From the IMG/VR virus record IMGVR_UViG_3300026097_000876, positions 62,001 to 126,000 of that record: DNA of 64,000 nucleotides; one strand, 5' to 3'. Shown here piece by piece: positions 14,061 to 60,311 of this stretch. Positions within the stretch are counted from its first letter, which is position 1. Every line of letters begins with the position of its first letter. The notes under the pieces were generated by a model, which ran no database searches, was not told the DNA's origin, and worked only from the letters and a program-made list of their open reading frames with translations. The translations under genes and the position numbers were made by a program.

Positions 14061-15500
14061 TTATTCCTCGTTGTCAAGATTTGCTAAAAATGATCTAAGT
14101 TTAGTAGACTCTGCTTCTACTTTGATTTTTCCTACTGACGAGCCTTGTGATGGATCGTCATTTGTTTCCGTATTATCTACGGCAGAATTGCGTTTGAGAT
14201 TACCTACAATGTTATTCACTGTTTTGTTAGTACCAAACGAATTAGTATTTTCATCTTCGTCTTCGTCCAAGTTTCGAATACGTAATGTGTCTACATCAAA
14301 CTCTAGATCAATTTTTTGTCCCACACCACTCGACGAACGTGTCTTCATTAACTGGATCTGATAGCGTCCTCGCTCACGCATTGCTCTACTAGTAAAGATA
14401 CCAATCAAGTTATCTGCTGTGTTGATCTTAGATATACCGCCCGAGATGTGCGAGTGATCAAATTCAATTTCTTCTACTGAACTTCTGTTCAACTGAGATG
14501 CTGTAACAAAGATAGTGTTCAACTCCATAGCCAAGTTACGTAACTCTTCCGATACATACTTGTCTTTCACAAACAAGTTCTCTGCGCTAATCTTTGCGGC
14601 AATAGGATGCATCAAATCCAAGTAGTCAACTAATAGTACATCTACCTTACGTCCTGTTTTAATTTCGTATTCTTTCAAATAGCTTCTGATATCGTTTGCG
14701 TTTTTGCCTGTGGGCATATACTTGACCTGGAATGCACCCGACTTCTTGCCAATCATCTTGACTTTCATTTCTACATCGTCAATACTTTTAAACACATCGC
14801 GACTAGGAATATCTGTAGTCATCGAATCAAGACGCATACTTACTAAGTTTTCTGAAAGCTCAAATGTCAAGTACACCACGTTCAATCCTTGTAGTGCCCA
14901 GTTCACTCCCATGTTTGCTAAGAATAAACTCTTACCAGATCCTGAACCACCTGCAAAGATATTCAGTTCGCCTCTGTTAAATCCGCCAAATAATTTTTTA
15001 TCTAAACTTGGCCAGCCTGTAGATATCTGTCCGTTCTTGTCTTTAATTGCTTCAAGACGAGACTTAGGATCAGCAAAGTAATCAGTACCTAGATCTTTCT
15101 GTAGACCAATTTGCACAGCTTTCTTAACCAAGTCTTCAACAGGCCCGTACTCGCCCTTTTCTAATAAGTCAGCACTATCAAGGATTGCTTTCTCTAATGC
15201 TTTGTGTCTACTAAATGTTTCAAATTCTTTGAGCAACCAGTCATAGTGATTTTCTGCTAAGTCGCCCGGGTGTTTTAAATCTACCTGAGTTGCTGCATTT
15301 ATCATTTCAAAAGTAGGTAATGCATTGTGTTCGACAACATAATCATTTAAAAACTTTGCAGGGTCTTGTAAGCGTCTATCAAAAGATAACGGATCAAACA
15401 CAGCTTGACATCGCACAAAACTCTCGGCGTCAGTCAGCATCATTTCTAGATAGATTTTTTGTATATCGTAACCGTAGTCTGTATTTTGTCTTGTGCTCAT
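14061..15500 (-). CDS. gp41: Replicative DnaB-like helicase (T4 gp41-like)
   Basis: Walker A GGSGSGKS; LLVDYLDLM; TASQLNR; QLMKTR. Confidence 0.9.
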   Translation of the reverse strand: MSTRQNTDYGYDIQKIYLEMMLTDAESFVRCQAVFDPLSFDRRLQDPAKFLNDYVVEHNALPTFEMINAATQVDLKHPGDLAENHYDWLLKEFETFSRHKALEKAILDSADLLEKGEYGPVEDLVKKAVQIGLQKDLGTDYFADPKSRLEAIKDKNGQISTGWPSLDKKLFGGFNRGELNIFAGGSGSGKSLFLANMGVNWALQGLNVVYLTFELSENLVSMRLDSMTTDIPSRDVFKSIDDVEMKVKMIGKKSGAFQVKYMPTGKNANDIRSYLKEYEIKTGRKVDVLLVDYLDLMHPIAAKISAENLFVKDKYVSEELRNLAMELNTIFVTASQLNRSSVEEIEFDHSHISGGISKINTADNLIGIFTSRAMRERGRYQIQLMKTRSSSGVGQKIDLEFDVDTLRIRNLDEDEDENTNSFGTNKTVNNIVGNLKRNSAVDNTETNDDPSQGSSVGKIKVEAESTKLRSFLANLDNEE

Positions 15501-15506
15501 ATTAGT

Positions 15507-15536
15507 ATTATAAAGCCTTATGCCATTTGTTGTCAA
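15507..15536 (-). promoter_or_regulatory. sigma70-type promoter for the helicase (leaderless)
   Basis: TTGACA-18-TATAAT, 6 nt from ATG. Confidence 0.7.
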
Positions 15537-16476
15537 TTGATATATGCTGTTTTGAATGTGCTAGAAACGTACCGATACAACTTCCAGGATCGCCTGGGTT
15601 CTTAGGCACATGCACATTTTGCCATTGATCTCTAATTTTATCAATAGCTTGTTTGTTTAGTGCGCCTCCGCCTGCTAGTGCTAAGTTAGAACTCTTAGTT
15701 TTATTTTTTGCCCAACAGCTTAGACCAAACACAGCATCTTCAAATATTTCTTGAGTAGTTGCTGCTAACATTCCTAAAGCTCTTTCAGTGCTTATTTCTG
15801 GACGGAACCATCGACAGCCTCTATGTAAATTTTCTTTAAATCTCCACCTAGGGTCTCGAAAGCTAGGTAAACGGTCTACTATCTCAGTCATTACAGCGTT
15901 GCGAAAATGTTCCGGGTCGTGACCTTCCCCCATGCTTGCTACCATGTACTCGTCACGTTGTGGTACTAATCCTAAACGTTGAGTCATTGCCGAATAAAAT
16001 AAGCCAGGACTGTGTGGATAACCTTGACTGTAAATCTTTCTAAGTTTATTGTTCTTTCCGTGCCATATAGTTAAAGTTTCAAACTCACCTATACTATCTA
16101 AACAGATTACAGCACAATCATCATGAGGTTGTGTGTAATAAGCATAGGCAGCATGACTTAGATGATGCTGAGTATATTTAATTTTACAATTGATATCCCA
16201 TTGCTTTAAATATTTTTTTATGTTATTTTCTTTGTATAACCAACCCTGTCCTGCTTTGAACTGACGCAGTGTTTTTAGTACAGGTTTTTCATACCAATAA
16301 ATCTTAGATGGCGTTCCAAATTTTTGTTTGGCTACTTCTAGCTGTGTCCAATTAAAGTCTGGGTCATTAGGAATTTTGGAGAAGTCCTTTGCAAGACTTG
16401 CCCATAGTAACTTATTGTCATCAAATACAGCTAGGCTAGCATCGTGACTATTGCCAACCATTCCCCAATTAATCAT
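15508..16476 (-). CDS. Carbamoyltransferase (NodU/CmcH/TobZ family), N-terminal Kae1-like domain only
   Basis: SHDASLA, HHLSHAA, DSIGE, GGGALN, PGDPG motifs; 322 aa. Confidence 0.8.
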   Translation of the reverse strand: MINWGMVGNSHDASLAVFDDNKLLWASLAKDFSKIPNDPDFNWTQLEVAKQKFGTPSKIYWYEKPVLKTLRQFKAGQGWLYKENNIKKYLKQWDINCKIKYTQHHLSHAAYAYYTQPHDDCAVICLDSIGEFETLTIWHGKNNKLRKIYSQGYPHSPGLFYSAMTQRLGLVPQRDEYMVASMGEGHDPEHFRNAVMTEIVDRLPSFRDPRWRFKENLHRGCRWFRPEISTERALGMLAATTQEIFEDAVFGLSCWAKNKTKSSNLALAGGGALNKQAIDKIRDQWQNVHVPKNPGDPGSCIGTFLAHSKQHISIDNKWHKAL

Positions 16477-16595: not shown

Positions 16596-17566
16596 TTTTT
16601 TGCTCTCAGTCTAATTTTAAGTGGCGATTCTTCTGCAGCATTTGCAATGCTATGTAACGTATACAGTCTTCCGTATTTACTTACAGCATCTCCGATGTCG
16701 CCTATCTCTGGCATCCAATCAGGTAAACTAACACTCCAACCTAGTTCAATAGCACGTTCTACTAGTTTGCTACCAGCCTTGTCTCTGTCAGGTACTACAA
16801 TGATCTGTTTCTGTAGCCTGTTGAGTAGCATTGCTTGTTGATCGCTAATCTCTGAACCGCCTAGGGCACAGCCTTCTACATGGATAGCATCGATCTGTCC
16901 TTCGCATACAATAGCAAACACTTTAGTATGACGCTGTTCATCTAGCCCATACACGAACCCGGGCTGTATCTCACTCAAGTACTTGGGCTTCTTGTCTGCT
17001 AGTATTGAACGTCCTGTCCACCCTACGATGCGTCCTTCGTAGTAGAAGGGTATGATCAATCTATCACGATAGCCTAGGCTTGGGCTCCAGTAGTAGTCAG
17101 TGTCATCTACATTCAAGTGACGTGCTGCCATGTACTCTAGTATAGCCATGCTAAACTTGTTGAAGTCTGTGATGTCTGTGATCTTAATCGCATCGTCTGG
17201 CAACGGGACAGTATTGAAGGTAGGCAGTTCCGCTATACGGTTCTTGACCTCAACGCCTTCGTTCTCTCTCATAACCTCAAGTGCCACCTTGTTGATTATA
17301 TCGTCAGGTGCTCCCATCCACTGGAGAAGTTTACGCAGCTTGTGGCTAAAGTTCCTGCCCGGTTGCCAGGATGCTTTGAAGCCGCAGTTAAAACAGTGAT
17401 AACTTACGCCACCATCCGGATTGGCAATTAAGCCGCCACGTTGTCTTGTGTCCGCAGTTGTACCATTATGATTACAACACGGAGCATTAAACGAAACCCA
17501 ACCACTAGGAGTTGTCTTACGCTTTGGTGGCAAATATGTTAGAACTGTATCAGATACTATACTCAT
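16583..17566 (-). CDS. gp61: DNA primase (T4 gp61/DnaG-like)
   Basis: Zn-binding CC.H...HCFNCG; TOPRIM CEGQIDA and PDRD. Confidence 0.9.
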   Translation of the reverse strand: MSIVSDTVLTYLPPKRKTTPSGWVSFNAPCCNHNGTTADTRQRGGLIANPDGGVSYHCFNCGFKASWQPGRNFSHKLRKLLQWMGAPDDIINKVALEVMRENEGVEVKNRIAELPTFNTVPLPDDAIKITDITDFNKFSMAILEYMAARHLNVDDTDYYWSPSLGYRDRLIIPFYYEGRIVGWTGRSILADKKPKYLSEIQPGFVYGLDEQRHTKVFAIVCEGQIDAIHVEGCALGGSEISDQQAMLLNRLQKQIIVVPDRDKAGSKLVERAIELGWSVSLPDWMPEIGDIGDAVSKYGRLYTLHSIANAAEESPLKIRLRAKKWFT

Positions 17567-17572
17567 ACTAAG

Positions 17573-17601
17573 AGTATACGATATATCTATAATAAAGTCA
17601 A
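17573..17601 (-). promoter_or_regulatory. sigma70-type promoter for the primase (leaderless)
   Basis: TTGACT-17-TATACT, 6 nt from ATG. Confidence 0.75.
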
Positions 17602-18773: not shown

Positions 18774-19323
18774 TTTGTTCGCAAAGTAAATTCATATGTA
18801 CTACAACAGCTACAGCATACGAGAAGGCATGGCTTTTCTTAAAGTAGTACCCGCCGTCAGTCGGCTTCGTCCACACTTCCTTCATTATCGTTTCCCAACC
18901 CTTGTCCGCTAGATGTCTCTTCGCTGGACGTATTATCGCTAGTGTCGCTGCCAATTGTTCTACCGATTGCGGCTTCAATTGTTTCAGCAGTGCTCCGTGC
19001 CCGTTTAGATGAAAGACGCTTTCGCTGAAGTCTTCGTGTTCCAGAAGTTGCCATAAAGGAGTCCTTTCCATTAATTCTTGAAGATGTCGACTGTCCTTAA
19101 CGTCTTTGTAAATGTTGACGTTAAGGAAGTCTAGTTTAAAGTAGCCGCGTTCTTCTGCGGTCTTATGATCAATTGTAGATAGATTATCTACAGGATTGTG
19201 TGGAATTTCAGTAGCATAAATTCCAGTATTGTGTTTTTTCCCAGTGTCTAATTTTGCTACTCGATGTTGTAGCTTAGACAATATAATATCTCTGTTAGGA
19301 AAATCAATATCAATATCAGGCAT
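18763..19323 (-). CDS. Miniature DNA polymerase III alpha (DnaE)-like protein
   Basis: MPDIDIDF, GYFKLDFLNV, AIIRP, FKKSHAFSYA; only 186 aa. Confidence 0.8.
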   Translation of the reverse strand: MPDIDIDFPNRDIILSKLQHRVAKLDTGKKHNTGIYATEIPHNPVDNLSTIDHKTAEERGYFKLDFLNVNIYKDVKDSRHLQELMERTPLWQLLEHEDFSESVFHLNGHGALLKQLKPQSVEQLAATLAIIRPAKRHLADKGWETIMKEVWTKPTDGGYYFKKSHAFSYAVAVVVHMNLLCEQISS

Positions 19324-19804: not shown

Positions 19805-19805
19805 C

Positions 19806-25087: not shown

Positions 25088-26327
25088 GTATAAATTTCCT
25101 CTGACTCCTACTCCAGTATCCTTCAGATACCTTGTCGTTGCATATAATTTGTAAATCGCATTGTTGCGAAAATGCTGTTACATGATTAAAACGTAAACTC
25201 CTAGAATCGTAATTAACTACACAATTAGGAACCCATCCTGATTTAATTAAAGGTTTAGGAAGTTTACTACTATTAATATACACTATTTTTGTATTTTCTG
25301 CAACTGGATTATTAAGTTTCTTTTGTTTTACATATTCGTTAAATGGATCAGAACCGTCTAGTCTAAACAATACAGATACGTCTTCAGAGTTTATAGAATA
25401 TTTTAAAGAATTATACGTTTCTACTAATTTATCAAATGCGTTATTTTCATCAAGTACAATTAGTATTGGAAATCTTTTTAATTCGGTTACACTAGATATA
25501 ATTTGATCAAAATTAAATTCATTATTGATTACTATTTCAGGATTATCTCTATTAATTATGATCTGAGACAAAGTTGAGTACTCTCTAATATATTGATTAA
25601 TATTATCAAATGAATGTAAACCATATAAGTACCTTCTTTCGTAATATAATACTATGTTATCTTTAGGATCGCCTATTGTTTTTAACAAATAGTTTACAGC
25701 ATTATCAGGTAAGTTTTTAATTTTATAATCATAAACTCCTGGAATGTACTCTTCTTTATTTTCATAATAACCTAAAAGAACATTGTATGCATCTAATATT
25801 TCTTGCTGTATTTCAAATTTGTGTTCGAATCGTTTAGCAATTTGCATTAGCTTAAACAAGTTTTCTGCATTTACTGGGAAGTGATGCGTGTGCTTATCAT
25901 ATTGTGTATTACGTAACGGATTTAAGTTTTTAATCTCTTGTACACGTTTAATAATTTTATTAGAAAAAGGAAATCTAATTGCTAAAAATTCTTCGTTATT
26001 TCGAGACACTATTCTAAGCCAGTGAGAGCGATCTATTTCTCTAAGGCCGTATTTTTTAATTTTAGAAATTGCTAAAACATCAATGTTTTTTTCGTTAAAC
26101 TGATCTGCATAATCATTAGTTAACTTTTCTTTAACTAGTGCATATTGTCTATCAGTCATCGCAACACCTTTAGACAATTGCCTAGCAATGCTAATTAAAA
26201 TAGTTGCATCGTTTTGTTTTAGATGAAATCCAAAATCTTCATAAGAAGTTTTTCCTTGTTTAGGAATTCTAACACCAGTTAGTAATGTTAGACAGTCCTC
26301 GCAAGTCGTAGGTTCTAGTACATTCAT
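25074..26327 (-). CDS. Hypothetical protein, 417 aa
   Basis: ORF track; own promoter. Confidence 0.75.
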   Translation of the reverse strand: MNVLEPTTCEDCLTLLTGVRIPKQGKTSYEDFGFHLKQNDATILISIARQLSKGVAMTDRQYALVKEKLTNDYADQFNEKNIDVLAISKIKKYGLREIDRSHWLRIVSRNNEEFLAIRFPFSNKIIKRVQEIKNLNPLRNTQYDKHTHHFPVNAENLFKLMQIAKRFEHKFEIQQEILDAYNVLLGYYENKEEYIPGVYDYKIKNLPDNAVNYLLKTIGDPKDNIVLYYERRYLYGLHSFDNINQYIREYSTLSQIIINRDNPEIVINNEFNFDQIISSVTELKRFPILIVLDENNAFDKLVETYNSLKYSINSEDVSVLFRLDGSDPFNEYVKQKKLNNPVAENTKIVYINSSKLPKPLIKSGWVPNCVVNYDSRSLRFNHVTAFSQQCDLQIICNDKVSEGYWSRSQRKFIHVSV

Positions 26328-26333
26328 AATAGT

Positions 26334-26362
26334 ATTATACGATACTATAGTTTAGAAGTCAA
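26334..26362 (-). promoter_or_regulatory. sigma70-type promoter (leaderless)
   Basis: TTGACT-17-TATAAT, 6 nt from ATG. Confidence 0.75.
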
Positions 26363-30481: not shown

Positions 30482-31251
30482 TAATCTCTTCTTTCTATAT
30501 CTTCTTCTGTTAGAGTGTCGCCCAACCATACTTCTATAACTTTAGCAGTTGTATCGCCCAAATTGGTTGCTTTGTGCCATGTGTTTTTTGGAATGTCAAT
30601 ACTATAACCAGAAATAAGATTTTGTATTTCAATTCTTCCATCTGCATGTTCTAGTTTCATTTGAATAGTGCCTTCAACAACGTGCCAGTGTTCACTACGT
30701 TCAAAATGTCTTTGGTCACTTAGTGCATTACCAGCATCAAATGCAAGTTGCTTAACTTGCCAGCCTTCGCCTTTGTCTAATACAGTATATCTACCCCAGT
30801 CACGTTCTGTAGTGGGTTGACTCCATTCTTTGAGTATCCAGCTGCTTGAGTTTTTCTTATCTTCGCCTCCGACAGCAAATGCAAACTCTACATCTTGATG
30901 CTCTCCGTATATAGTGTATTCTGGAGTAGTAGTATTTGTTCTGTCGCCGCCATTAGCAAATACTACTTTCCAACTACTGCCTTTGGTTTGTAGTACTTGG
31001 CCTATGGCACTAAGTGCAGTATTGTCGTCGTCGTTAAAACCGATAACTTCGTCAACACATGCAAGTTCTTTAATGATTGCTGCACGTTCTTCAAACGGCA
31101 TAAATGGTCTACCTTTTTTGCGTGTAAGCCACTCGTCTGAATTGACACCTACTACTAAATGATTGCCGAGTTCTTTTGCTGATTTAAAATAGGCGATGTG
31201 CCCTGAGTGTAAGGGATCAAAGCCGCCAGTAACCAATACCACTTTATTCAT
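30481..31251 (-). CDS. Cytidylyltransferase-like domain fused to a C-terminal cupin (MPI type II-like)
   Basis: TGGFDPLHSGH; FANGGDR; LSDQRH..RSEHW. Confidence 0.85.
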   Translation of the reverse strand: MNKVVLVTGGFDPLHSGHIAYFKSAKELGNHLVVGVNSDEWLTRKKGRPFMPFEERAAIIKELACVDEVIGFNDDDNTALSAIGQVLQTKGSSWKVVFANGGDRTNTTTPEYTIYGEHQDVEFAFAVGGEDKKNSSSWILKEWSQPTTERDWGRYTVLDKGEGWQVKQLAFDAGNALSDQRHFERSEHWHVVEGTIQMKLEHADGRIEIQNLISGYSIDIPKNTWHKATNLGDTTAKVIEVWLGDTLTEEDIERRD

Positions 31252-31256
31252 ATAGA

Positions 31257-31264
31257 TATTTATA
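31257..31264 (-). promoter_or_regulatory. T4-type late promoter, 5 nt from ATG
   Basis: TATAAATA. Confidence 0.7.
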
Positions 31265-45519: not shown

Positions 45520-45527
45520 ACTAGTAT

Positions 45528-47114
45528 TTATCCTAGACCGCCTGTAACAAAGATTGGCATTGGAGCTTCGTATTCTTCAAATTCTGTATCAGTTTGTGTA
45601 AAAGTATTATATATTCTAGGATCCCAATCTTTTAAAACTGTCATCATTCTTAATGCAAGAATAGTCGCCATAACTAAATCGTCTGTTGCTCCGGACTTAG
45701 CCTTAAAACTTGTACCAGTAGCTACAAATCCTTTTAACTCACTTATTAATGCACTACTATTAATTTTAAGTTTTTCGTTTTCGATCATAGTCTTTAATCG
45801 ACTACATGCTGAAATTTTAGTACCGTGCGTAGTGTTAAATCCTTTGCGGAACTTTCTTACATGTCCTTTGCGCATAGGCTCGCTAACAAACAAGCCCGGT
45901 ATATTCTCTTCACCAAAATCGTTAATTACAATTAATGCAGCTTCACCGATAGAATTATTTTCCACGCTCCAATATATATTTGTTCCGCTAGTTCCACATT
46001 GTTCTTTGATGTGTGTGCAGATATCTGTAAGTATTCTAATCTGTGCAGGTATGGGCGTTTCGTTATGCCTCCATTCTGCTACTTGAGTATACGACGGTAG
46101 TTCAAATACTTGTATAGCTGCATAATCACCGCCAGTGCCCATACTTGGATCAAGTGCAACAGCATAGTTTTCTGTAGACTTAGGTTTAGCAAACCATCGT
46201 GTTTGTCCCATGTTCATTATAGGATCAATGCCTTCCATGCCAGACAGTTTAAGTGAACTAATTAGTGTTTCGTCATAAACTAGAAATTCGCATCCATACT
46301 CTCGGCGAAATCTCTCTTCACCAATTCTTCCAATCTCTGCTCGTTTCCATTCGTCGTCACGATCTGGATGCTCATCCCAAGTAGCTGTAAAACCAAAAAA
46401 TCCATTAGTTCCGATTTCTTGTTCATTGCCATACTCGTCAAATTTATTTTGGCTTTCTTTCCAAATAGTAGCAAACGTATCTTCGTCTGAATTTGGTGTT
46501 GATGTAAGAATTGCACGACCACCAGTTGCTAGCGTAGGTGATATCGAAGTCCAAAATTCTTCAGCAATACCAGGATTTACAAATGCAAACTCGTCACAAT
46601 ATAATAACGATATTGACATGCCTCGTCCTGTGTTACCAGTTGTTGTTGAACTTACAATACGTGAACCGTTTTCAAATTCGATACTACCTTTATTGTAACT
46701 AGTAACACCTGCTCTAATATGATCTGGGCAAGTTTCGTATACAAATCGAATTCGTTGCATGATTTCTTGTGCACCCGAATACTTGTGTGCAGCAATAAGA
46801 ATTGTTTGGTCTGGATTAAACATAGCATACCATGCTAGATATACCGCTGCACAGGTTGTTTTTCCTGTTTGACGAGGTAGCATGTTAACATTGAACCTAT
46901 TATCATGATACGATTGTAAAAGTCGTACTTGATAATCAAAAGGATCGAATAGTAACTTTCCTTTTACAGGATGTTGAATATATGCAAATTTACGAGCAAA
47001 ATAAAGATACCCTAATTCAGGATCCATGCATTTTGCAAGATCAGTAATTTGTTCTTCTGTATATGTTTCTCGTTGATTTGCTTTTTTGGTTAATACGCCA
47101 TCTAATGATTTCAT
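45528..47114 (-). CDS. gp17: Terminase large subunit
   Basis: PRQTGKTT; LYCDEFAF; STPN; nuclease ALDPSMG; DDLVMA. Confidence 0.95.
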   Translation of the reverse strand: MKSLDGVLTKKANQRETYTEEQITDLAKCMDPELGYLYFARKFAYIQHPVKGKLLFDPFDYQVRLLQSYHDNRFNVNMLPRQTGKTTCAAVYLAWYAMFNPDQTILIAAHKYSGAQEIMQRIRFVYETCPDHIRAGVTSYNKGSIEFENGSRIVSSTTTGNTGRGMSISLLYCDEFAFVNPGIAEEFWTSISPTLATGGRAILTSTPNSDEDTFATIWKESQNKFDEYGNEQEIGTNGFFGFTATWDEHPDRDDEWKRAEIGRIGEERFRREYGCEFLVYDETLISSLKLSGMEGIDPIMNMGQTRWFAKPKSTENYAVALDPSMGTGGDYAAIQVFELPSYTQVAEWRHNETPIPAQIRILTDICTHIKEQCGTSGTNIYWSVENNSIGEAALIVINDFGEENIPGLFVSEPMRKGHVRKFRKGFNTTHGTKISACSRLKTMIENEKLKINSSALISELKGFVATGTSFKAKSGATDDLVMATILALRMMTVLKDWDPRIYNTFTQTDTEFEEYEAPMPIFVTGGLG

Positions 47115-47127
47115 AAAGTATTTACCC

Positions 47128-47154
47128 AAAAAAATAGCGCCTTTCGACGCTATT
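47128..47154 (-). terminator. Rho-independent terminator
   Basis: ATAGCG(T)C-GAAA-GGCGCTAT followed by T7 on the minus strand. Confidence 0.75.
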
Positions 47155-50109: not shown

Positions 50110-51300
50110 CTATGGTCCAAAATCGTTAGGATTTGGTGGCGGTTTACTAGTTTCGCCTCCTCCTGGGTTGGCGCCACTTAATAAACTTGCACCCCCTACT
50201 AATGCCGCAGCAGCTGCAACTGTGCCTATACTACCGCTACCGCCTTTAGGAAATGCTACTCCTGCAACACCACTTACATCAATACCGGTTGTTTCTCCAA
50301 TGGCACCAATTGCGGCTCCTAATAATTCTCCTTTGAGTCCACTAGCACTTAAATTTGAAGCATTAGTAATTGCATTAGCAGCTTTCAATACAGTTCCAAA
50401 GTTTGCTTTACCACTAGTAATGTCATCCAGTACTCCAAAGCCTCCAGCAAGCACTCCGCCTACTCCGAGCAAACTTGCTGCGCCCCCACCAGATAATGAA
50501 TTAGGACTCGGAGTTTTATCGTATAGTTCTTGTGCAAAACCTTTAGGGCCTGCATCCCCAACTGGACCTCTACTGTAATGCACAGTTTCATAATCAATAG
50601 TCATTTGGTTAGTAACAGTATCGCTAACACTATTGTCCATAGTGTCGTGTTGCCACGCACTAATAATAGGATTAACTAATGTCATTGCTGTGTAGCGTTT
50701 TCTTGACATTTGATGAATTGTAATACTTGAAAAGAAAGGAGCAAAACTATCGTTATCAAGACCGTATCTATATTGTCTTTGACTAAACAAATTTCCTCTG
50801 TTAAATTCTTCACTAAAACTAGGCAACGTATCTTGGTATTCTTTAATTGTTGGATCGGGTGCGCCAGCTGGTCCTACTTTTGTATAATTTCCGTCTCTAT
50901 AATAATACCTATAGTATGCTTCCCACATGGCTGTAGTCACACCATATGAATCGTCATGAAACTGAATAGTTACTGGTTGGTAGTCAATTCTTTTTTGAAC
51001 TACTCTTTTTCTATTGTATTGATGCTTTACATCAGTTTGAATATTATATGCCGGTAGTTGAACATTTTTAACCAACATATTAAGTTCATTAAGATGCTTT
51101 TCTGAAAGCTGAGGAATAATCGCAGATGCATCTCTATTAATCGTGAAACTTACATGATAAAGAAATTTTACCTTAGGTGAAAGTCTATGACTATCGTCAA
51201 CATATAGTCTAGCCGCGTGTTGATAATCTGCTAAGTTGCCTTTAGGATTTAATGCACCTGATGCAACGTTGTCTAAAAAACCATTTAAAAAGTTTGCCAT
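50110..51300 (-). CDS. Tail tube-like / baseplate tube initiator with a Gly-rich C-terminus
   Basis: LVKNVQLP, YQPVTIQFHDD, TIDYE; adjacent to the tube gene. Confidence 0.55.
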   Translation of the reverse strand: MANFLNGFLDNVASGALNPKGNLADYQHAARLYVDDSHRLSPKVKFLYHVSFTINRDASAIIPQLSEKHLNELNMLVKNVQLPAYNIQTDVKHQYNRKRVVQKRIDYQPVTIQFHDDSYGVTTAMWEAYYRYYYRDGNYTKVGPAGAPDPTIKEYQDTLPSFSEEFNRGNLFSQRQYRYGLDNDSFAPFFSSITIHQMSRKRYTAMTLVNPIISAWQHDTMDNSVSDTVTNQMTIDYETVHYSRGPVGDAGPKGFAQELYDKTPSPNSLSGGGAASLLGVGGVLAGGFGVLDDITSGKANFGTVLKAANAITNASNLSASGLKGELLGAAIGAIGETTGIDVSGVAGVAFPKGGSGSIGTVAAAAALVGGASLLSGANPGGGETSKPPPNPNDFGP

Positions 51301-51351
51301 ATAAATATTTATCCATTTATATTAACTACATATATAACTTTATTTAGTCAC

Positions 51352-51374
51352 AAAAAAAGGAGCTTGCGCTCCTT
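51352..51374 (-). terminator. Rho-independent terminator after the tail tube gene
   Basis: AAGGAGC-GCAA-GCTCCTT followed by a T run. Confidence 0.85.
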
Positions 51375-51394: not shown

Positions 51395-52024
51395 TTAGAT
51401 AGAGCCGCCACCTGTAATAGCAGTATTAACTGTTCTACCTACTGCTGTACCAATTCCAGTACCCTGTGGTGTTTGAATTGCGTTATCGTAACGAATAGAT
51501 AATCCAACAGTTACAACTTCTGATGTTGCATAGTTAAGTGCATTATAATTAGCACTTTCTAAGTAACAACCGTAAAGCTCAAATGTTTCAAGTACTCCTG
51601 GTACATTAGCACCGTTGCCACCGTCTAAGATTTCAATTCTAGTTACAAACTTGTAATCTGCTCCACTTGCTGCACTTGACTGTTCAAAGAAATCAAACTG
51701 TTTCTGAAGTTGTTCACCAACTAATTTTTGTACATTGTTACTTACATCTTCACGCAAGTTAAGTGAAATTGGCTCCCAGTTGTGCTTGCCTGCTAAGTGT
51801 ACTCTTGAATTGTAAATATTAACAGTCATTTGTTCAAAACTAACATTAGGTCGTGTTACGTCCATAACTTGTTTTGTCAACTCTGTTGTCGGACTTGATA
51901 CGCCAAAGTTTTCTAAAGATACTCTAAAACGGTACTGTAGTTTTGGCATTAACAGACCTTGGTTAGATGCACTTGCGTTGCTATCTAGTGGTACTGTTAA
52001 TTTTGAAAGTGTTGAAATTGCCAT
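51395..52024 (-). CDS. gp19: Tail tube protein (T4 gp19-like)
   Basis: Follows the sheath gene; GKHNWEPISL; GCYLES.NY; IRYD. Confidence 0.8.
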   Translation of the reverse strand: MAISTLSKLTVPLDSNASASNQGLLMPKLQYRFRVSLENFGVSSPTTELTKQVMDVTRPNVSFEQMTVNIYNSRVHLAGKHNWEPISLNLREDVSNNVQKLVGEQLQKQFDFFEQSSAASGADYKFVTRIEILDGGNGANVPGVLETFELYGCYLESANYNALNYATSEVVTVGLSIRYDNAIQTPQGTGIGTAVGRTVNTAITGGGSI

Positions 52025-52054
52025 TATATGCTCCTGTTACTTTTATTTATCTGT

Positions 52055-55000: not shown

Positions 55001-55333
55001 TCTAACAACATATGCTCTGTTGCTTACTCCTAAATACGAATATGCTGCTTGTAAGCCATATTCGTTCAACTCTCCACCGTTTACTGGATTGTTGTTTGCG
55101 TCCACTTGGAAAGTTGGATCTCCAAATGTATCTGCTAAATCTCTTTGTGATGTAATTAAAAACGGAACGCCGGCATTTGCCTTTGTTGTTCCTGTTGCTG
55201 TACCGGTTCCGGCAGCGTTACTTTTATCTTGTTCCGAAGTAACGAAAAGCATTGGTGTGGTGCCTGGTTCTGCTGGAGTGTAAAAACTTTCGTCAATTAC
55301 ACTAACTTGAACTCCTGGTGATACTAAAGCCAT
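52055..55333 (-). CDS. gp18: Contractile tail sheath protein (T4 gp18-like), enlarged
   Basis: MALVSPGVQV..IDES; PWFAPAG..RG; RINVARL; IFEPND; EFIYIP. Confidence 0.95.
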   Translation of the reverse strand: MALVSPGVQVSVIDESFYTPAEPGTTPMLFVTSEQDKSNAAGTGTATGTTKANAGVPFLITSQRDLADTFGDPTFQVDANNNPVNGGELNEYGLQAAYSYLGVSNRAYVVRADVDLGELQPSASAPAAAPANGTYWFDTALTKYGIFEWNGNAVTVTGGQTFTNKIPLVITSNTQLVGEQNTGAPKGAVGAVGDYAVVATTTVNKVYYKNTSGAWVKLGTADWVKSWPTIKGSASNPTLTTSQTIIINGTTVTISGTAVSDMETAIDDAGITGVSAGVTDGKLYIYSDGSSTTDGSTDDDGAIVISAGASGTLLSDLGITAGTYYAPALEIAPHTSVPAFKTADTQTRPTGSVWFKTTEANLGAQVNVKVYNGTTRLWESKDAPVYKTHQEALYNLDRTGGGINLALGQLYVQAHTSESENEELDFTIFARNVSGATRIVSSAVTASSLTAQSYGFIMAESDPTKAAIQEAKALSVTATGAASDADLIADAINAAGFENIVASVDASNRVVIEHNDGGEIRIADTDSLLAGIGFSAYNYTTKLGTANLYAAPSGDSTYDFHASNWKILTQTASEDAPTALTTDGRLWYSSIVDEVDMLVHDGTTWKGYANVYPDADPAGPIVAATQPTQQSDTSPLVTGDIWVSTADLENYPQVHKYNADLQKWIALDEGDQTTEDGILFADARYGTSGGTATEAPSGTIAELLVSDFLDTDAPDPALYPKGMLLWNLRRSGFNVKRFERNYIDLTADNVRMGDVSMATYYPHRWVTESANQPNGAGSFGRKAQRKVIVQALQSMVNGNQDIRDDESRLFNVMACPGYPELIGEMVSLNYDRGLTAFVVGDTPFRLTSDATTLNNYGNNVALAVEDNDDGAVTRDEYLGMFYPSLFTSDNAGNNIVVPPSHGIIRTLALSDQVSFPWFAPAGTRRGGITNASASGFIDAEGEFKSIALNEGQRDTLYSQNINPITFLTGAGLVNYGQKTRARNASALDRINVARLVIYLRSQLKKLAKPYIFEPNDKITRDEIKAQVDSLMLELVSQRALYDFLVVCDESNNTPNRIDRNELYVDIAIEPVKAVEFIYIPLRLKNTGEISGL

Positions 55334-55369
55334 ATTATTTCTCCTGTTATTATTAACAACTGTTAAAAG

Positions 55370-55377
55370 TATTTATA
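55370..55377 (-). promoter_or_regulatory. T4-type late promoter for sheath and tube
   Basis: TATAAATA. Confidence 0.75.
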
Positions 55378-55444
55378 TGATTTGGGTCAATTCACACAGT
55401 AAAACCACCAATAAAAGGTGGCGGAAAGGTGTGGTAAATACAAT

Positions 55445-55783
55445 ATGAGACCATTATGTGAATGCGGATACCGTCCAGCGGCAATAAATTATAAAAAAGA
55501 CGGCAAAACATATTATCGAAAGTCGTGCGAAACTTGTTTACATCAAGGGAAGAAAAAATACGGAATTCCTAAATGGTATCAGGCAGGATATCGACAAAAA
55601 TCAGTATGTGAAAAATGTGGATTTAAAAGTCAACACAAAGAACAGTTTAATGTGTATCATATAGACGGTGATCTAAACAACGTGCTTCCTAGTAACTTAA
55701 AAACTATATGTGCTAATTGTCAGCGGTTAGTGCAGAAGCAAGACGTAAAGTGGAAGCAAGGCGACCTTGTACCTGACTTTTAA
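55445..55783 (+). CDS. HNH endonuclease-like protein
   Basis: CEKCG...HIDGDLNN...NLKTICANC. Confidence 0.75.
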   Translation: MRPLCECGYRPAAINYKKDGKTYYRKSCETCLHQGKKKYGIPKWYQAGYRQKSVCEKCGFKSQHKEQFNVYHIDGDLNNVLPSNLKTICANCQRLVQKQDVKWKQGDLVPDF

Positions 55784-56393: not shown

Positions 56394-56396
56394 CTA

Positions 56397-57158
56397 TTAT
56401 CCTATAGTAAATCCGTATCCTGTGCCGCCTGGTACAGCAAGTGTTATATCACTTTCTAACTTTTCCATTTCGGCTTGTGCTTCTGCTTTTAGTGCATCGC
56501 CATTTAAAGAACTACCACCTTGAGGGCCGGCAATAGTAGCAAATTTACTACGTGCTTCGCCTAACATGTATTTGCACTTAGCAAGAGTGTAATCTTTAAT
56601 CCATTGGATTGCTAGATAATCTTCTAATAAATCAAAGTCCGGTCTATAGTTGTACACGTACAACAACAGTTCTTCTTCTGCTCTAGGTCGTTGTAATACT
56701 GTAAGTCTTTTATTTGATCTATTCCATTTAAATTCAATAAATGAACCAAACATGCGACCTACTAGTTCTTGATAACCTGCGAACATTTCATATGTTGCTA
56801 GGCCGCCCATGTTTGAACTACTCAGCAGATATGTATTTGTATAGGCCATGTTGAATGGTTCAAAAAGCGTACCGCCGTCACCGCCGCCGGTGCGTGAGCC
56901 AATGCTTCTGCGAAAAATTTGACGCACTTCCATTACTTCTGTTGGGAGAACATAATCATTTTGGTCAATTACTGTTGGTAGAAACATGTACGATTCTTCT
57001 ACACCGTTATCTGATCTCTGTCTAAATTTTGTTAGTGCTGTGTTTAACGCCGTCTCGTAATGTATAGGATCAAGTTCAACATCAACCATGCCGCCGCCGA
57101 GCATAGTTTCAGCATATTTGTAAACTTCTTGTTTCTTAGTATTAATGTTTGTAGTCAT
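56397..57158 (-). CDS. gp13: Neck protein (T4 gp13-like)
   Basis: LGGGMVDVELD; WIKDYTLA.CKYMLGEARSKF...LNG..L. Confidence 0.8.
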   Translation of the reverse strand: MTTNINTKKQEVYKYAETMLGGGMVDVELDPIHYETALNTALTKFRQRSDNGVEESYMFLPTVIDQNDYVLPTEVMEVRQIFRRSIGSRTGGGDGGTLFEPFNMAYTNTYLLSSSNMGGLATYEMFAGYQELVGRMFGSFIEFKWNRSNKRLTVLQRPRAEEELLLYVYNYRPDFDLLEDYLAIQWIKDYTLAKCKYMLGEARSKFATIAGPQGGSSLNGDALKAEAQAEMEKLESDITLAVPGGTGYGFTIG

Positions 57159-57203
57159 TTAATATTCTCCACATAGTATTTATTCGTTACGATAAATATG
57201 TAT

Positions 57204-58361
57204 ATGCCAAGACTTAGTTTATATAGACCCGAACGCGGAAAAGATTATGCATTCTTAGATAAGACAATAACAGAAATGTTTACAGTCGGAGGTACTGACG
57301 TATTTGTACACAAATATCTAGGACCAAAAAATCCCGAAGAAGCTGATGCAACAGCAACTCAACCTCTTTATGACGCTGTAGCCGAAACTAATATTCAAGA
57401 TATGCTATTCATGGAAAATAGGGATCGCAAATATGATCCTGATGTTTACACTATGAGAGGTATCTATAACGTTAGTGATGTAGATTTTGACATGAGCCAA
57501 TTTGGTTTATTTTTGCAAAACGACATTGTGTTCATGACAATTCCAATTAACTACAGTGTTAGAACATTAGGAAGAAAAATTATGTCAGGAGATGTTATTG
57601 AACTTCCTCATTTAAAAGATGAAAATGCATTAAATGACTATAGTGTAGCATTAAAAAGATTTTATGTTGTAGAAGATGTTAACAGAGCTGCTGAAGGATT
57701 TTCGCCAACTTGGTATCCACACTTATATCGTGTGAAAATGAAACAAATTGTTGATTCGCAAGAGTTTAAAGAGATTCTTGATTTGCCAGCAGAAGAAGGA
57801 AGTAGTCAGACATTAAGAGATGTATTATCAACTTACGAATCAGAAATGCAAATTAATGATGCAATTATTTCTCAAGCCGAAGCTGATGCTCCTAAAAGTG
57901 GTTATGACACCAGTCATTTCTTTACACTACAAGTAGACGAAGATGGTAGACCGGAACTTGTAACAGCTGATCTTGACACAATGGATGCTAGTACAATTAA
58001 CGAATTTGCTGACAGAATAAATCAAACACCTGAAAGAGAAGGATATACTGGCTATTTGGTCGGCGACGGCATTGCTCCAAACGGCGAAGCATTTGGTAGT
58101 GGTATTAGTTTTCCTCTTAGTAGCATTAAGGGTGATTACTTTTTAAGAGTAGACATGTTTCCTAATAGATTGTTTAGGTATGACGGAACTAGGTGGGTCA
58201 AGATGGAAGATAATGTACGCATGACTATGACAAACTCTAGCGATAGAAAAACACAAAAAGGTACATTTGTTAACAATACAAATACTAATGAGATTGCGGG
58301 AGATACTGTACAAGAAAGACAAAGTATTTCGCAAGCACTTAGACCTAAGGCAGATAATTAA
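57204..58361 (+). CDS. Neck / head-closure protein (T4 gp14-like)
   Basis: SQFGLFL; GDVIELPH; divergent from gp13 and upstream of gp15. Confidence 0.65.
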   Translation: MPRLSLYRPERGKDYAFLDKTITEMFTVGGTDVFVHKYLGPKNPEEADATATQPLYDAVAETNIQDMLFMENRDRKYDPDVYTMRGIYNVSDVDFDMSQFGLFLQNDIVFMTIPINYSVRTLGRKIMSGDVIELPHLKDENALNDYSVALKRFYVVEDVNRAAEGFSPTWYPHLYRVKMKQIVDSQEFKEILDLPAEEGSSQTLRDVLSTYESEMQINDAIISQAEADAPKSGYDTSHFFTLQVDEDGRPELVTADLDTMDASTINEFADRINQTPEREGYTGYLVGDGIAPNGEAFGSGISFPLSSIKGDYFLRVDMFPNRLFRYDGTRWVKMEDNVRMTMTNSSDRKTQKGTFVNNTNTNEIAGDTVQERQSISQALRPKADN

Positions 58362-59848
58362 TGGATCATTTTTACGACGGTCAGATAAGACGATATATTA
58401 CACAACTTGTTAGATTGTTTAGTAATTTTTCTTACAAAGACGGTGACGGCAAAGCAGTACAGATACCAGTAATGTATGGAGATATTACTCGACAAGTTGG
58501 TAATATTCTTAGAGATAACTCAGAAAATAAAATTCCAAGTGCTCCAAGAATTGCTGTTTATATCACATCATTAGACCAAGACAGATCAAGAACAAGTGAT
58601 AGTTCTTATACTAATAAAGTGCATATTCGTGAAAGAGCTTATGATAACAATAATAACGAATATCTAAATACTCAAGGTAAAAATTATACTGTTGAAAGGA
58701 TTATGCCTAGCCCTTATACACTAGGTATTAACATCGACATTTGGAGTACAAACACAGATCAAAAACTTCAAATTGTAGAACAAATTTTAATGCTTTTTAA
58801 TCCTAGTCTAGAAATACAAACTACAGACAATTATATTGATTGGAGTAGTTTGACTAGTGTTGAATTAACAAATATTAATTTTAGCAGTCGAACTATTCCG
58901 ATCGGAACAGAATCAGATATAGATATAGCACAGTTAAGTTTTACAACTCCAATCTATATAAACATGCCAGCTAAAGTTAAAAAGCTAGGTGTAATTACAG
59001 ATGTTGTTATGAGTATTTTTGATGAATCAAAAGGAACCATTGACCTGGGTAATAGTACTCCTGAATTAGAAGCATGGTCAGGAACTCGAGTGCCATCAAG
59101 TGATCTAGAAAACAATAAGTTAGAAATTAATATGATAGTTCGAGGCTACGATAATTATGACTTATCTGTATTAAACAATGTAGCACAACTAATAGATAAA
59201 GGACAAACTGGTGCAATAACTTGGACGGAATTTTTCCAGTCTCGACCCAACGATTATCTTGCAGGACTTTCTCAATTGCAATTAAAAAGAACTACAATAG
59301 AAGGGGAATCTGTTTCCGGAAGCGTTAACGGAACTGTTACAATAAATCCAATAGACGATACACAATTAATTATAAATTGGGACGAAGACACAATACCTAC
59401 TAATTCATCTTTGCCTTCGCCTAGCGGAAGGAATAATACCGGAAGTGTAGATTTTATTATTGACCCGTCTACGTATAATCCAAATGTTGATAGCACTAAT
59501 GCAGGGTTACGATTATTATTATTAGGTGCTATTAATAACAGTGAAAATGTTAATGGTCTTATGGACTTTGGTCAAGATCCAAGTGACGGAAGTTCTAAAG
59601 ATCCATATGATGGTCCAGATGCTTGGAAAAACGACGACGGTAGTGATTTTGTTGCCGACACAAATGACATTGTAGAATGGGACGGTAGCGAATGGAATGT
59701 TGTTTTTGATGCAAGCGAATATACCGAGCAAGATACTGTGTACGTTACTAATCTAAATACAGGTGTTCAGTACAAGTGGACCGGTGTTGAGTGGATTTTA
59801 TCATTCGAGGGCGAATACCGAAAAGGATCGTGGCGCATTACCTCTTAA
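58361..59848 (+). CDS. gp15: Tail terminator / sheath stabiliser (T4 gp15-like) with a C-terminal extension
   Basis: FYDGQIRRY...IPVMYG; PSPY.LGI...QIVEQIL..FNP. Confidence 0.75.
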   Translation: MDHFYDGQIRRYITQLVRLFSNFSYKDGDGKAVQIPVMYGDITRQVGNILRDNSENKIPSAPRIAVYITSLDQDRSRTSDSSYTNKVHIRERAYDNNNNEYLNTQGKNYTVERIMPSPYTLGINIDIWSTNTDQKLQIVEQILMLFNPSLEIQTTDNYIDWSSLTSVELTNINFSSRTIPIGTESDIDIAQLSFTTPIYINMPAKVKKLGVITDVVMSIFDESKGTIDLGNSTPELEAWSGTRVPSSDLENNKLEINMIVRGYDNYDLSVLNNVAQLIDKGQTGAITWTEFFQSRPNDYLAGLSQLQLKRTTIEGESVSGSVNGTVTINPIDDTQLIINWDEDTIPTNSSLPSPSGRNNTGSVDFIIDPSTYNPNVDSTNAGLRLLLLGAINNSENVNGLMDFGQDPSDGSSKDPYDGPDAWKNDDGSDFVADTNDIVEWDGSEWNVVFDASEYTEQDTVYVTNLNTGVQYKWTGVEWILSFEGEYRKGSWRITS

Positions 59849-59861
59849 GATAATTACTTGT

Positions 59862-60311
59862 ATGAATCAAGAAATCATTTGTAGTGGTGCATTAATTTAT
59901 TCTTTAAAATCTAAACGTTTTTTACTTTTGCATAGAACACAAAGTAAACAAAAAAATGTTTGGGGATTAGTAGGAGGAACAAACGGAAAAAATGAACGTC
60001 CGTGGCCTGCACTACAAAGAGAAATCATAGAAGAAGTTGGTGAACTTCCTAATATTGTAAAAACAATTCCGCTCGAAACATTTGTTAGCACAGATGAAAA
60101 ATTTAGTTTTCATACATATCTAGTAGTTGTTAATGACGAATTTTTACCAATATTAAACGAAGAACACGATGGTTACGCATGGGTAAGTTTTGACAAATGG
60201 CCCAAGCCATTACATCAAGGCCTACGCAATACATTACAAAATAAAACAAATCAAACAAAATTAAAAACCGTTTTTGACCTAATAGGATATTTACAAAATG
60301 AAGCAGATTAA
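59862..60311 (+). CDS. NUDIX hydrolase
   Basis: Nudix box GG..GKNE.PW.ALQREIIEEVG; LNEEHDGYAW. Confidence 0.8.
   Translation: MNQEIICSGALIYSLKSKRFLLLHRTQSKQKNVWGLVGGTNGKNERPWPALQREIIEEVGELPNIVKTIPLETFVSTDEKFSFHTYLVVVNDEFLPILNEEHDGYAWVSFDKWPKPLHQGLRNTLQNKTNQTKLKTVFDLIGYLQNEAD

What the first reader, a model, noticed from the sequence alone, without database searches (positions are those of the whole stretch)
15500..59862. Replication and late genes appear leaderless, unlike the SD-led early cassettes
sigma70-type -10 boxes end 6 nt before the ATG for the helicase (15500), primase (17566) and ORF 26327. T4-type late motifs (T/G)(A/G)TAAATA end 4-5 nt before the ATG at 31251, 45519, 47114 (TerL), 51300, 55445 and 57204, with a GATAATTA variant at 59862. 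No SD is present in these gaps, so the transcription start should fall on or next to the AUG. Together with the anti-GAGGG RNA and the pseudo-deformylase, this suggests a translational programme in which SD-led early mRNAs are silenced while leaderless mRNAs continue. That link is inference.
Basis: partly seen in the sequence, partly recalled or inferred. Interest (0 to 1): 0.65.

Follow-up and report, generated by a model that had tools for sequence, protein, structure and literature searches.

The report
Promoters fused to start codons
In this uncultivated aquatic giant phage and its many relatives, a fixed subset of genes has its promoter placed so close to the ATG that the mRNA should start on the start codon, with no ribosome-binding leader. 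This layout is conserved across the clade, but it covers a minority of genes and is not a general switch in translation.

Summary
Three full sigma70 consensus promoters (TTGACA/T, 17-18 nt, TATAAT/TATACT) end exactly 6 nt before the ATG of helicase, primase and ORF 26327. Six T4-type late motifs end 4-5 nt before an ATG, and a GATAATTA variant does so at 59862.

These spacings put the canonical +1 on the A of AUG. No RNA data could be obtained, so the start sites are inferred.

The layout is conserved:
- Primase: spacing is 5-8 nt in 55 of 57 distinct relatives (39-86% aa identity).
- TerL, the 855-aa structural gene, the tail-tube-like gene, the nucleotidyltransferase gene, the 112-aa ORF and NUDIX keep their late motif 4-8 nt from the ATG.
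- Genome-wide, promoter-to-ATG distance is bimodal (4-7 nt, or about 14-40 nt with an SD). This holds here and in a complete 358-kb relative, but not in T4 or PA5oct.
- The genome encodes a gp55-like late sigma factor.

About 80% of late-promoter genes carry AGGAG leaders, including large structural genes, so SD-led translation is not shut off late. Leaderless genes occur in both promoter classes.

Best reading: a clade-specific, interchangeable "promoter fused to AUG" expression module. It is a new variant of known phage leaderless mRNAs.

The parts
15498..15536 (-). Sigma70 consensus promoter fused to the DnaB-like helicase ATG (15500): TTGACA-N18-TATAAT-6 nt-ATG
   Evidence: Pfam DnaB_C E 2e-20. 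In 27 of 68 relatives d=5-7. About 12 relatives have a 22-39-nt leader, 8 of them with an AAGGA SD.
17564..17601 (-). Sigma70 promoter fused to the primase ATG (17566): TTGACT-N17-TATACT-6 nt-ATG. The 35-nt intergenic gap is exactly the promoter.
   Evidence: Toprim_2. In 55 of 57 distinct relatives (39-86% aa identity) d=5-8; 44 have d=6. The spacer sequence varies.
26325..26362 (-). Sigma70 promoter fused to the ATG of ORF 26327 (417 aa, unknown function): TTGACT-N17-TATAAT-6 nt-ATG
   Evidence: The syntenic homologue in the complete relative G001 (34% identity, E 4e-62) has TTGACA-N17-TATAGT-7 nt-ATG.
31249..31264 (-). Late motif TATAAATA + 5 nt + ATG of a cytidylyltransferase/cupin gene (256 aa)
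   Evidence: In 36 of 48 relatives d=4-5. Some relatives in other gene contexts have an AAGGA SD instead.
45517..45532 (-). Late motif GATAAATA + 5 nt + ATG of an 855-aa virion structural gene. The motif overlaps the TerL stop codon.
   Evidence: All 46 relatives keep GATAAATA at d=4-8, whether the TerL stop is TAG, TGA or an upstream TAA.
47112..47126 (-). Late motif GGTAAATA + 4 nt + ATG of the large terminase
   Evidence: In 42 of 46 relatives the order is terminator hairpin, T7, G(A/G)(G/T)TAAATA (or TAAGTA), then 4-8 nt to the ATG.
47128..47154 (-). Intrinsic terminator (stem with GAAA loop, then a T-run) abutting the TerL late motif
   Evidence: The hairpin is conserved with compensatory changes in relatives.
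51298..51313 (-). Late motif GATAAATA + 5 nt + ATG of a tail-tube-like gene (396 aa)
   Evidence: In 37 of 38 relatives d=5. The one exception has a 19-nt leader with AGGAG.
51352..51374 (-). Intrinsic terminator upstream of the 51300 late promoter region
   Evidence: Conserved in relatives.
55433..55447 (+). Late motif GGTAAATA + 4 nt + ATG of a 112-aa ORF (weak HNH-like match)
   Evidence: All 27 relatives have d=4-5.
57191..57206 (+). Late motif GATAAATA + 5 nt + ATG (57204) of a 385-aa virion structural gene. It lies back-to-back with the SD-led late promoter of the 57158(-) gene.
   Evidence: In 27 of 28 relatives the spacing is 8 nt, which predicts a 2-3-nt leader.
59849..59864 (+). Variant motif GATAATTA + 5 nt + ATG of a NUDIX gene
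   Evidence: Relatives keep ATAA(G/T/C)TA at d=5 in 22 of 26. TAAGTA also replaces TAAATA before TerL in some relatives.
52022..52052 (-). Contrast case: late motif + 19-nt leader with AGGAG + ATG (209-aa gene)
55331..55377 (-). Contrast case: TATAAATA + 36-nt leader with AGGAG + ATG of a 1092-aa gene
57156..57184 (-). Contrast case: AATAAATA + 18-nt leader with GGAG + ATG (253-aa gene)

Best explanation
The window belongs to an uncultivated aquatic jumbo phage. It is distantly related to PA5oct, Rak2 and CBB and encodes a T4 gp55-like late sigma factor.

This clade uses two discrete, interchangeable expression modules:
(a) promoter, then a leader of about 14-40 nt with an SD, then ATG;
(b) promoter fused to the ATG.

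In module (b) the -10 element is placed so that the canonical +1 falls on the A of AUG. That means 6 nt after a sigma70 TATAAT (which spans -12 to -7), or 4-5 nt after a late TAAATA (T4 TATAAATA spans -13 to -6). The transcript then begins with AUG, or has at most 3 nt before it.

Translation must then proceed without SD pairing, most probably by direct binding of 70S ribosomes or 30S-IF2-fMet-tRNA to the 5'-terminal AUG, as for lambda cI.

The module is fixed for some genes (primase, TerL, the 855-aa and tail-tube-like structural genes). For others, such as helicase, it swaps repeatedly with the SD-led form.

Shown: the sequence geometry, its conservation, the bimodal spacing, the terminators and the gp55 homologue.
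Inferred: the transcription start position and the mode of translation.
For: 1. Exact geometry at all ten sites. The composite sigma70 pattern gives 3 matches against 0.00 expected.

2. Distances are bimodal.
- Late motif to gene ATG in G000: 13 at d=4-5, 0 at d=0-3, 3 at d=6-13, 61 at d=12-45.
- Late motif in the complete relative G001: 27 at d=4-5, none at d=2-3, 6 or 9-12, 62 at d=12-45.
- Sigma70 in G001: 9 at d=5-7 and 44 at d=12-45.
- T4 and PA5oct show no such peak.

3. Spacing is conserved while the spacer sequence drifts.
- primase 55/57
- TerL 42/46
- 855-aa gene 46/46
- tail-tube-like gene 37/38
- 112-aa ORF 27/27
- NUDIX 22/26
- nucleotidyltransferase gene 36/48

4. Natural swaps occur. 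The helicase has d=5-7 in 27 relatives and a 22-39-nt leader (mostly with AAGGA) in about 12. At least 10 changes of state are forced by well-supported branches of the helicase tree. One tail-tube relative has a 19-nt AGGAG leader.

5. Intrinsic terminators lie immediately upstream of the TerL and 51300 motifs.

6. A gp55-like sigma factor is encoded: phrog_12791 E 1.7e-81, T4 gp55 E 1.5e-6. The same motif drives SD-led structural genes at longer distance.

7. The T4 late motif position, with its first T at -13, is taken from PMC2988020.

8. Protein alignments start at residue 1 of these ATGs, with synonymous variation from codon 2 onward.
Against: - No RNA 5' ends were available.
- About 29% of called genes in this genome lack an SD, mostly inside operons. 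SD-less translation of read-through transcripts therefore clearly occurs, and it could also serve these genes.
- Terminators leak.
- For the 385-aa structural gene the spacing in relatives is 8 nt, and some TerL relatives have 7-8 nt. That implies a 2-3-nt leader rather than a strictly leaderless mRNA.
- gp33 and gp45 homologues were not found, so the T4 start-site geometry is transferred by analogy.
- The host is unknown, so the efficiency of leaderless translation in it is unknown.
Confidence: 0.75

Rival explanations
1. The abutting motifs are real promoters, but most protein comes from longer read-through transcripts. In those, the genes are internal, SD-less cistrons translated by coupling, 70S scanning or another non-SD initiation route. 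The leaderless transcripts would be minor by-products of packing promoters tightly.
For: About 29% of called genes lack an SD and sit in tight operons. The 45519 ATG lies 8 nt after the TerL stop. The 31251 gap is only 20 nt.
Against: - Terminator hairpins with T-runs directly precede the TerL and 51300 motifs.
- The spacing is held to within 1 nt over deep divergence. Simple packing would not require that.
- Distances of 0-3 and 6-13 nt are almost empty.
- When the spacing is lost, an SD appears.
Confidence: 0.15
2. The motifs next to the ATG are not promoters. They would be AT-rich translation signals or binding sites for a phage regulator that happen to resemble -10 elements.
For: AT-rich sequence upstream of start codons can enhance translation (general knowledge). 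The raw TAAATA-N4-5-ATG count is not above shuffles.
Against: - The sigma70 cases carry a full -35 at 17-18 bp.
- The same late motif, with the same flanks, occurs 14-40 nt upstream of SD-led structural genes, where it cannot be a ribosome site.
- A gp55-like sigma factor is present.
- The related phages CBB and GAP32 use ATAAATA as their predicted late promoter (PMC5259590).
Confidence: 0.05
3. One reading: a CCCUCA-bearing RNA and a dead deformylase shut down the GAGGG-led early mRNAs, while leaderless mRNAs go on being translated.
For: - GAGGG is early-specific: 8 of 32 sigma70-promoter genes, against 4 of 54 late and 2 of 208 others.
- A structured 3'UTR RNA displays CCCUCA in loops (z -4.6).
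- The deformylase homologue lacks HExxH.
- The phage encodes bS21.
- There is a precedent in phiYS40 (PMC3594737).
Against: - Most late genes use AGGAG leaders, so SD-dependent initiation stays essential.
- Three leaderless genes have sigma70-type promoters and are therefore not late-specific.
- bS21 is also present in PA5oct and Phosso, whose TerL genes are SD-led.
- In G001 the CCCTC cluster is only partly kept and a strict promoter-plus-GAGGG pattern finds nothing, yet G001 has more leaderless genes.
Confidence: 0.08

Closest known systems
Lambda cI mRNA from PRM, and other single phage leaderless mRNAs
   Same: A sigma70 promoter whose +1 is the A of AUG. Translation proceeds without an SD from a 5'-terminal AUG (PMC10491246).
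   Different: Here it is not one regulatory gene. It is a conserved set of replication and structural genes, driven by two promoter classes, across a large clade.
Thermus phages phiYS40 and P23-45
   Same: Lytic phages in which many middle and late transcripts are leaderless. In phiYS40 this was linked to higher IF2 and lower IF3 (PMC3594737, citing Sevostyanova 2007).
   Different: In those phages most middle and late transcripts are leaderless, and Thermus is, from general knowledge, a leaderless-rich host. Here only about 20-30% of late-promoter genes are leaderless and the rest use strong AGGAG. The promoters are gp55-type and sigma70 consensus. No phage-encoded IF1, IF3 or S1 was found.
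T4 late promoters (gp55, gp33, gp45) and the ATAAATA late motif of CBB, GAP32 and Rak2-like jumbo phages
   Same: An 8-bp TATAAATA-like element at -10 with no -35. A gp55 homologue is present, and the motif lies upstream of structural genes (PMC2988020 and PMC5259590).
   Different: T4, PA5oct, CBB and Phosso place the motif about 14-40 nt from the ATG with an SD. This clade also fuses it to the ATG. The first two motif positions are G(A/G) more often than TA. gp33 and gp45 homologues were not detected.
Genome-wide leaderless signature of Actinobacteria and Deinococcus (GeneMarkS-2 'group C')
   Same: A -10-like box at a fixed short distance upstream of start codons (general knowledge; the paper is only cited).
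   Different: Here the signature is in a phage genome whose other genes use canonical SDs. It also involves a phage-specific sigma factor.

Membership tests
Leaderless mRNA | Primary 5' end on, or within a few nt of, the A of the start codon | not testable with these tools
Only promoter geometry supports it.
Leaderless mRNA | Promoter -10 element at the distance that puts +1 on the AUG, with no room for an SD | tested here: met
   Sigma70 -10 ends 6 nt before the ATG at three sites. The late motif ends 4-5 nt before the ATG at six sites, plus one variant. This is conserved in relatives.
Leaderless mRNA | AUG (not GUG or UUG) start codon | tested here: met
   All ten window sites are ATG. The relative surveys considered only ATG, so they add nothing on this point.
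Leaderless mRNA | Little secondary structure at the 5' end of the coding region | tested here: inconclusive
   For the first 40 nt, mean energy is -2.4 kcal/mol in 40 leaderless candidates and -3.5 kcal/mol in 67 SD-led late genes (p=0.02). GC content is also lower in the leaderless set.
T4-type (gp55-dependent) late promoter | TATAAATA-like 8-mer at -10 without a -35, upstream of late or structural genes | tested here: met
   G(A/G)TAAATA(C/T)(T/A) lies upstream of TerL, tail-tube-like and virion genes, and of many SD-led structural genes.
T4-type (gp55-dependent) late promoter | Phage-encoded gp55-like sigma factor | tested here: met
   G000 185542-186381(-): phrog_12791 E 1.7e-81 and phrog_234 E 2.6e-22; T4 gp55 E 1.5e-6.
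T4-type (gp55-dependent) late promoter | gp33 co-activator and gp45 sliding-clamp activator | tested here: inconclusive
   Single-sequence searches with T4 gp33 and gp45 found nothing in a record that is about 73% complete. The same absence was reported for CBB (PMC5259590).
Sigma70 consensus promoter | TTGACA, 17 +/- 1 bp, TATAAT | tested here: met
   10-12 of 12 hexamer positions match at the three sites. The elements are conserved in relatives while the flanks drift.
phiYS40-type leaderless translational takeover | Most middle and late transcripts leaderless | tested here: not met
   With the same scan, 13 late motifs lie 4-5 nt from a gene ATG in G000, against 61 at 12-45 nt. In G001 the figures are 27 and 62. 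Of 54 gene starts with a late motif within 45 nt, 44 have an SD-type match and 10 have none.
phiYS40-type leaderless translational takeover | Shift of host initiation factors (IF2 up, IF3 down) or phage factors acting on initiation | not testable with these tools
   No IF1, IF3 or S1 homologue is encoded. A bS21 gene is present but is not clade-specific.

The most novel reading that the evidence does not exclude
In this abundant aquatic jumbo-phage clade, an 8-bp gp55-type promoter plus 5 nt plus AUG may be a complete 16-nt expression signal. It would be efficient enough for high-copy structural proteins such as a tail tube. That would mean leaderless initiation is a major, selected route in the unknown host, possibly boosted by phage factors acting at the ribosome (phage bS21, the dead deformylase). 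The two start modes would then allow separate translational control of gene subsets.
Probability: 0.15. Interest if true: 0.75.

Novelty: new variant of a known kind. Interest (0 to 1): 0.55.

Why it matters
- Annotation: start codons in this clade can be fixed from promoter geometry. ORF finders otherwise pick wrong upstream TTG starts; the -35 TTGACA of the helicase promoter and a TTG in the TerL terminator T-run were both listed as starts.
- Biology: gp55-type late promoters appear able to produce leaderless mRNAs. This is conserved over deep divergence and swaps naturally with SD-led versions, which gives a ready comparative system for asking when bacteria and phages choose leaderless initiation.
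- Ecology: the clade has hundreds of contigs in aquatic metagenomes. Its host's translation preferences may be inferable from this signature.
- Engineering: the 38-nt sigma70 module and the 16-nt late module are about the shortest complete expression signals possible.

Tried and rejected
- Megablast of two window stretches against phages found no match. Only protein-level relatives exist among isolates; the best is PA5oct TerL at 55%.
- The IMG/VR pattern search for ORF 26327 found nothing. Its homologue was found by synteny in G001 instead.
- Host inference from the phage bS21 in genome contigs found nothing. No psbA is present. The host remains unknown.
- T4 gp33 and gp45 searches were empty.
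- The raw count of TAAATA-N4-5-ATG against shuffles is not significant and was dropped as an argument.
- A at +4 occurs in 22 of 40 leaderless candidates and 25 of 67 SD-led genes. This was not tested statistically and is not used as evidence.
- bS21 as a clade-specific cause was rejected, because PA5oct and Phosso have it too.
- Window sites with a sigma70 promoter 9-14 nt from the first ATG (4161, 56351) were examined and set aside. An SD-led in-frame ATG a few codons downstream is the more likely start.
- My simple gene caller mis-starts or misses some genes, so the gene-class counts are approximate.
- Literature searches found no earlier report of late promoters fused to start codons in T4-like, jumbo or cyanophage genomes. 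The library is incomplete, so this is weak evidence of novelty.

Full report
**What the window is.** The window is bases 62001-126000 of a 261,806-bp single-contig IMG/VR virus record (about 73% complete, GC 37.7%). No isolate matches it at the DNA level. Its large terminase is 55% identical to that of Pseudomonas jumbo phage PA5oct and more distantly related to those of Atu_ph07, Phosso and CBB. Hundreds of IMG/VR contigs encode relatives, with 60-90% protein identity among the best 80 kept per search. One of them is a complete 357,559-bp genome, G001.

**Check of the observation.** Every site is as described.
- The helicase (15500), primase (17566) and ORF 26327 each have a full consensus sigma70 promoter: TTGACA/T, 17-18 bp, then TATAAT or TATACT. 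The -10 ends exactly 6 nt before the ATG.
- The composite pattern occurs 3 times against 0.00 expected.
- (T/G)(A/G)TAAATA ends 4-5 nt before the ATG at 31251, 45519, 47114, 51300, 55445 and 57204. GATAATTA does so at 59862.
- The bare late pattern is not enriched over shuffles (7 against 3.3). The signal lies in where the matches fall, as the next paragraph shows.

**Is it more than chance?** For every TAAATA I took the distance to the next ATG that opens an ORF of at least 50 codons.
- In this genome the distances are bimodal. There are 13 at d=4-5, none at d=0-3, 3 at d=6-13, and a broad second mode at 14-40 nt in which an AGGAG-type SD is usually visible.
- In G001 the pattern is sharper. 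There are 27 at d=4-5, with none at d=2-3, 6 or 9-12, and 62 at d=12-45. For strong sigma70 promoters there are 9 at d=5-7 and 44 at d=12-45.
- T4 and PA5oct, analysed identically, show no such peak.
- In PA5oct, CBB and Phosso, TerL is not promoter-fused: an SD-like purine run or a plain short gap precedes its ATG. The gene after TerL sits 20-30 nt downstream of a late motif, with a clear SD in CBB and Phosso.

**Conservation.** I aligned the upstream regions of homologues on the conserved N-terminus and kept only distinct sequences.
- Primase: 57 relatives, 39-86% aa identity. 55 have TTGACA-N17-TATAAT at 5-8 nt from the ATG, and 44 are at exactly 6. The six spacer bases vary freely. The upstream gene's stop codon abuts the -35, so the 35-nt gap is nothing but promoter.
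- TerL: 42 of 46 have a terminator hairpin, a T7 run, then G(A/G)(G/T)TAAATA (or TAAGTA), then 4-8 nt to the ATG.
- 855-aa structural gene: 46 of 46 keep GATAAATA at 4-8 nt, whether the TerL stop is TAG, TGA or an upstream TAA. The motif is therefore not a by-product of the stop codon.
- Tail-tube-like gene: 37 of 38 at d=5.
- 112-aa ORF: 27 of 27 at d=4-5.
- NUDIX: 22 of 26 with ATAA(G/T/C)TA at d=5.
- Nucleotidyltransferase gene (31251): 36 of 48 at d=4-5.
- ORF 26327: its syntenic G001 homologue (34% identity) has a consensus promoter at d=7.
- 385-aa structural gene (57204): 27 of 28 relatives have d=8. There a 2-3-nt leader is predicted, not a strictly leaderless mRNA.

**Natural swaps.**
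- The helicase promoter is fused to the ATG (d=5-7) in 27 relatives. It lies 22-39 nt away, mostly with an AAGGA SD, in about 12. No promoter was recognised in 29; some of these look like extended -10 promoters that my classifier missed.
- On a helicase tree the fused state changes at least 10 times, even counting only well-supported branches.
- One tail-tube relative replaces the 5-nt gap with a 19-nt AGGAG leader.
- Intermediate distances are avoided. This is what is expected if both layouts work and layouts in between do not.

**Why the motifs are read as promoters.**
- The sigma70 cases have both hexamers at consensus spacing.
- The late motif, with the same flanking preferences, precedes many SD-led structural genes at 14-40 nt.
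- The genome encodes a gp55-like late sigma factor (phrog_12791, E 1.7e-81; T4 gp55, E 1.5e-6). That gene is itself behind a consensus sigma70 promoter with an SD leader.
- Related jumbo phages use ATAAATA as their predicted late promoter (PMC5259590).
- Intrinsic terminators sit directly upstream of the TerL and 51300 motifs.

**Geometry.** The first T of T4's TATAAATA is at -13 (PMC2988020), so five bases separate the motif from +1. A sigma70 -10 spans -12 to -7 (textbook knowledge), leaving six. The observed 5-nt and 6-nt gaps therefore put +1 on the A of AUG. For the 4-nt gaps a start one base earlier would be needed, which is plausible given purine preference.

**How it most likely works.** The mRNAs begin with AUG, or have at most 3 nt before it. 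They are translated without SD pairing, by 70S ribosomes or 30S-IF2-fMet-tRNA binding the 5'-terminal AUG, as for lambda cI (PMC10491246). The start position and the translation route are inferences, because no RNA data could be obtained. Weak supporting signs are slightly less structure in the first 40-60 nt than in SD-led late genes (p about 0.02, confounded by GC) and the exclusive use of ATG.

**What does not hold.** The layout covers a minority of genes.
- In the span given, roughly 9-10 of about 56 called genes have it. The others are SD-led or operon-internal (the counts are approximate).
- Of 54 gene starts with a late motif within 45 nt, 44 have an SD-type match and 10 have none. The SD-led ones include the 1092-aa gene at 55333 and structural genes of 1351-1638 aa elsewhere in the genome.
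- SD-dependent initiation must therefore stay active late.
- Leaderless genes occur behind both sigma70-type and late promoters, so they do not form a temporal class.

They are real, but I could not connect them to the leaderless genes.
- GAGGG is an early-specific SD.
- A structured 3'UTR at 7048-7157 shows CCCUCA in loops.
- The deformylase homologue has lost HExxH.
- In G001 the CCCTC cluster is only partly kept, and a strict search for early promoter plus GAGGG finds nothing. G001 nevertheless has more leaderless candidates.
- A phage bS21 gene exists. It is also in PA5oct and Phosso, whose TerL genes are SD-led.
- No IF1, IF3 or S1 homologue is encoded.

**Comparison with what is known.** Leaderless phage mRNAs are known: lambda cI, and most middle and late transcripts of Thermus phage phiYS40, where they were linked to IF2/IF3 changes (PMC3594737). 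T4-type late promoters in Rak2/CBB-like jumbo phages are also known. The new elements here are:
- the fusion of a gp55-type promoter to the start codon;
- a strict two-mode spacing;
- gene-specific conservation across a large uncultivated clade;
- repeated swapping with SD-led versions.

Searches of the held literature found no earlier description, though the library is incomplete. I rate it a new variant of a known kind.

**Verdict.**
- Observation: confirmed.
- Leaderless reading: probable, about 0.75.
- Proposed translational programme: unlikely as stated, about 0.08.
- Interest: 0.55.

Noticed in passing
G000:C1:22959-23234 (-), outside the window: The phage encodes ribosomal protein bS21 (PF01165, 55.9 bits) behind a sigma70-type promoter with an SD leader. 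bS21 is also found in PA5oct, Phosso and the complete relative G001, so it is not specific to the leaderless clade.
   Followed up: partly
window 19316-19819 (-): A peptide deformylase homologue (PF01327, E 5e-34) has RLIDL where the metal-binding and catalytic HExxH motif should be. ESCLS and GTGVSANQ are kept. It is probably a catalytically dead pseudo-enzyme.
   Followed up: partly
window 7048-7157 (+): The 3'UTR after the 340-aa early gene has four CCCTCA motifs and ends in a terminator. The predicted fold (z -4.6) places three of them in hairpin loops. The motif is complementary to the GAGGG SD of the early cassettes. It is only partly conserved in G001.
   Followed up: partly
window 1200-8400 (+): A repeated early module is reused before at least 13 small genes: gGTTGACA-N17-TATACT-gtatataacagttagggcaaaGAGGGcaa-ATG. 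This region has 44-48% GC against about 35% elsewhere.
   Followed up: partly
window 57159-57203: A 45-nt divergent intergenic region holds two late motifs as an inverted repeat (TATTTAT ... GATAAATA). One drives an SD-led gene on the minus strand (57158). The other is fused to the ATG on the plus strand (57204). The arrangement is conserved in relatives.
   Followed up: partly
window 15536 and 47129: The longest-ORF starts listed for helicase (TTG 15536) and TerL (TTG 47129) are artefacts. The first is the -35 hexamer TTGACA and the second lies at the end of the terminator T-run.
   Followed up: yes
L163 (IMGVR_UViG_3300007609_000015, 67 kb): A second IMG/VR contig encodes a protein 100% identical to the 385-aa window protein. 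The three upstream regions examined in it are also identical to the window. It is probably the same phage population from another assembly.
   Followed up: no
window 55404-55424: One hairpin serves both strands. On the minus strand it is terminator-like after the dNMP kinase gene. On the plus strand it sits just upstream of the late motif of the 112-aa ORF.
   Followed up: no
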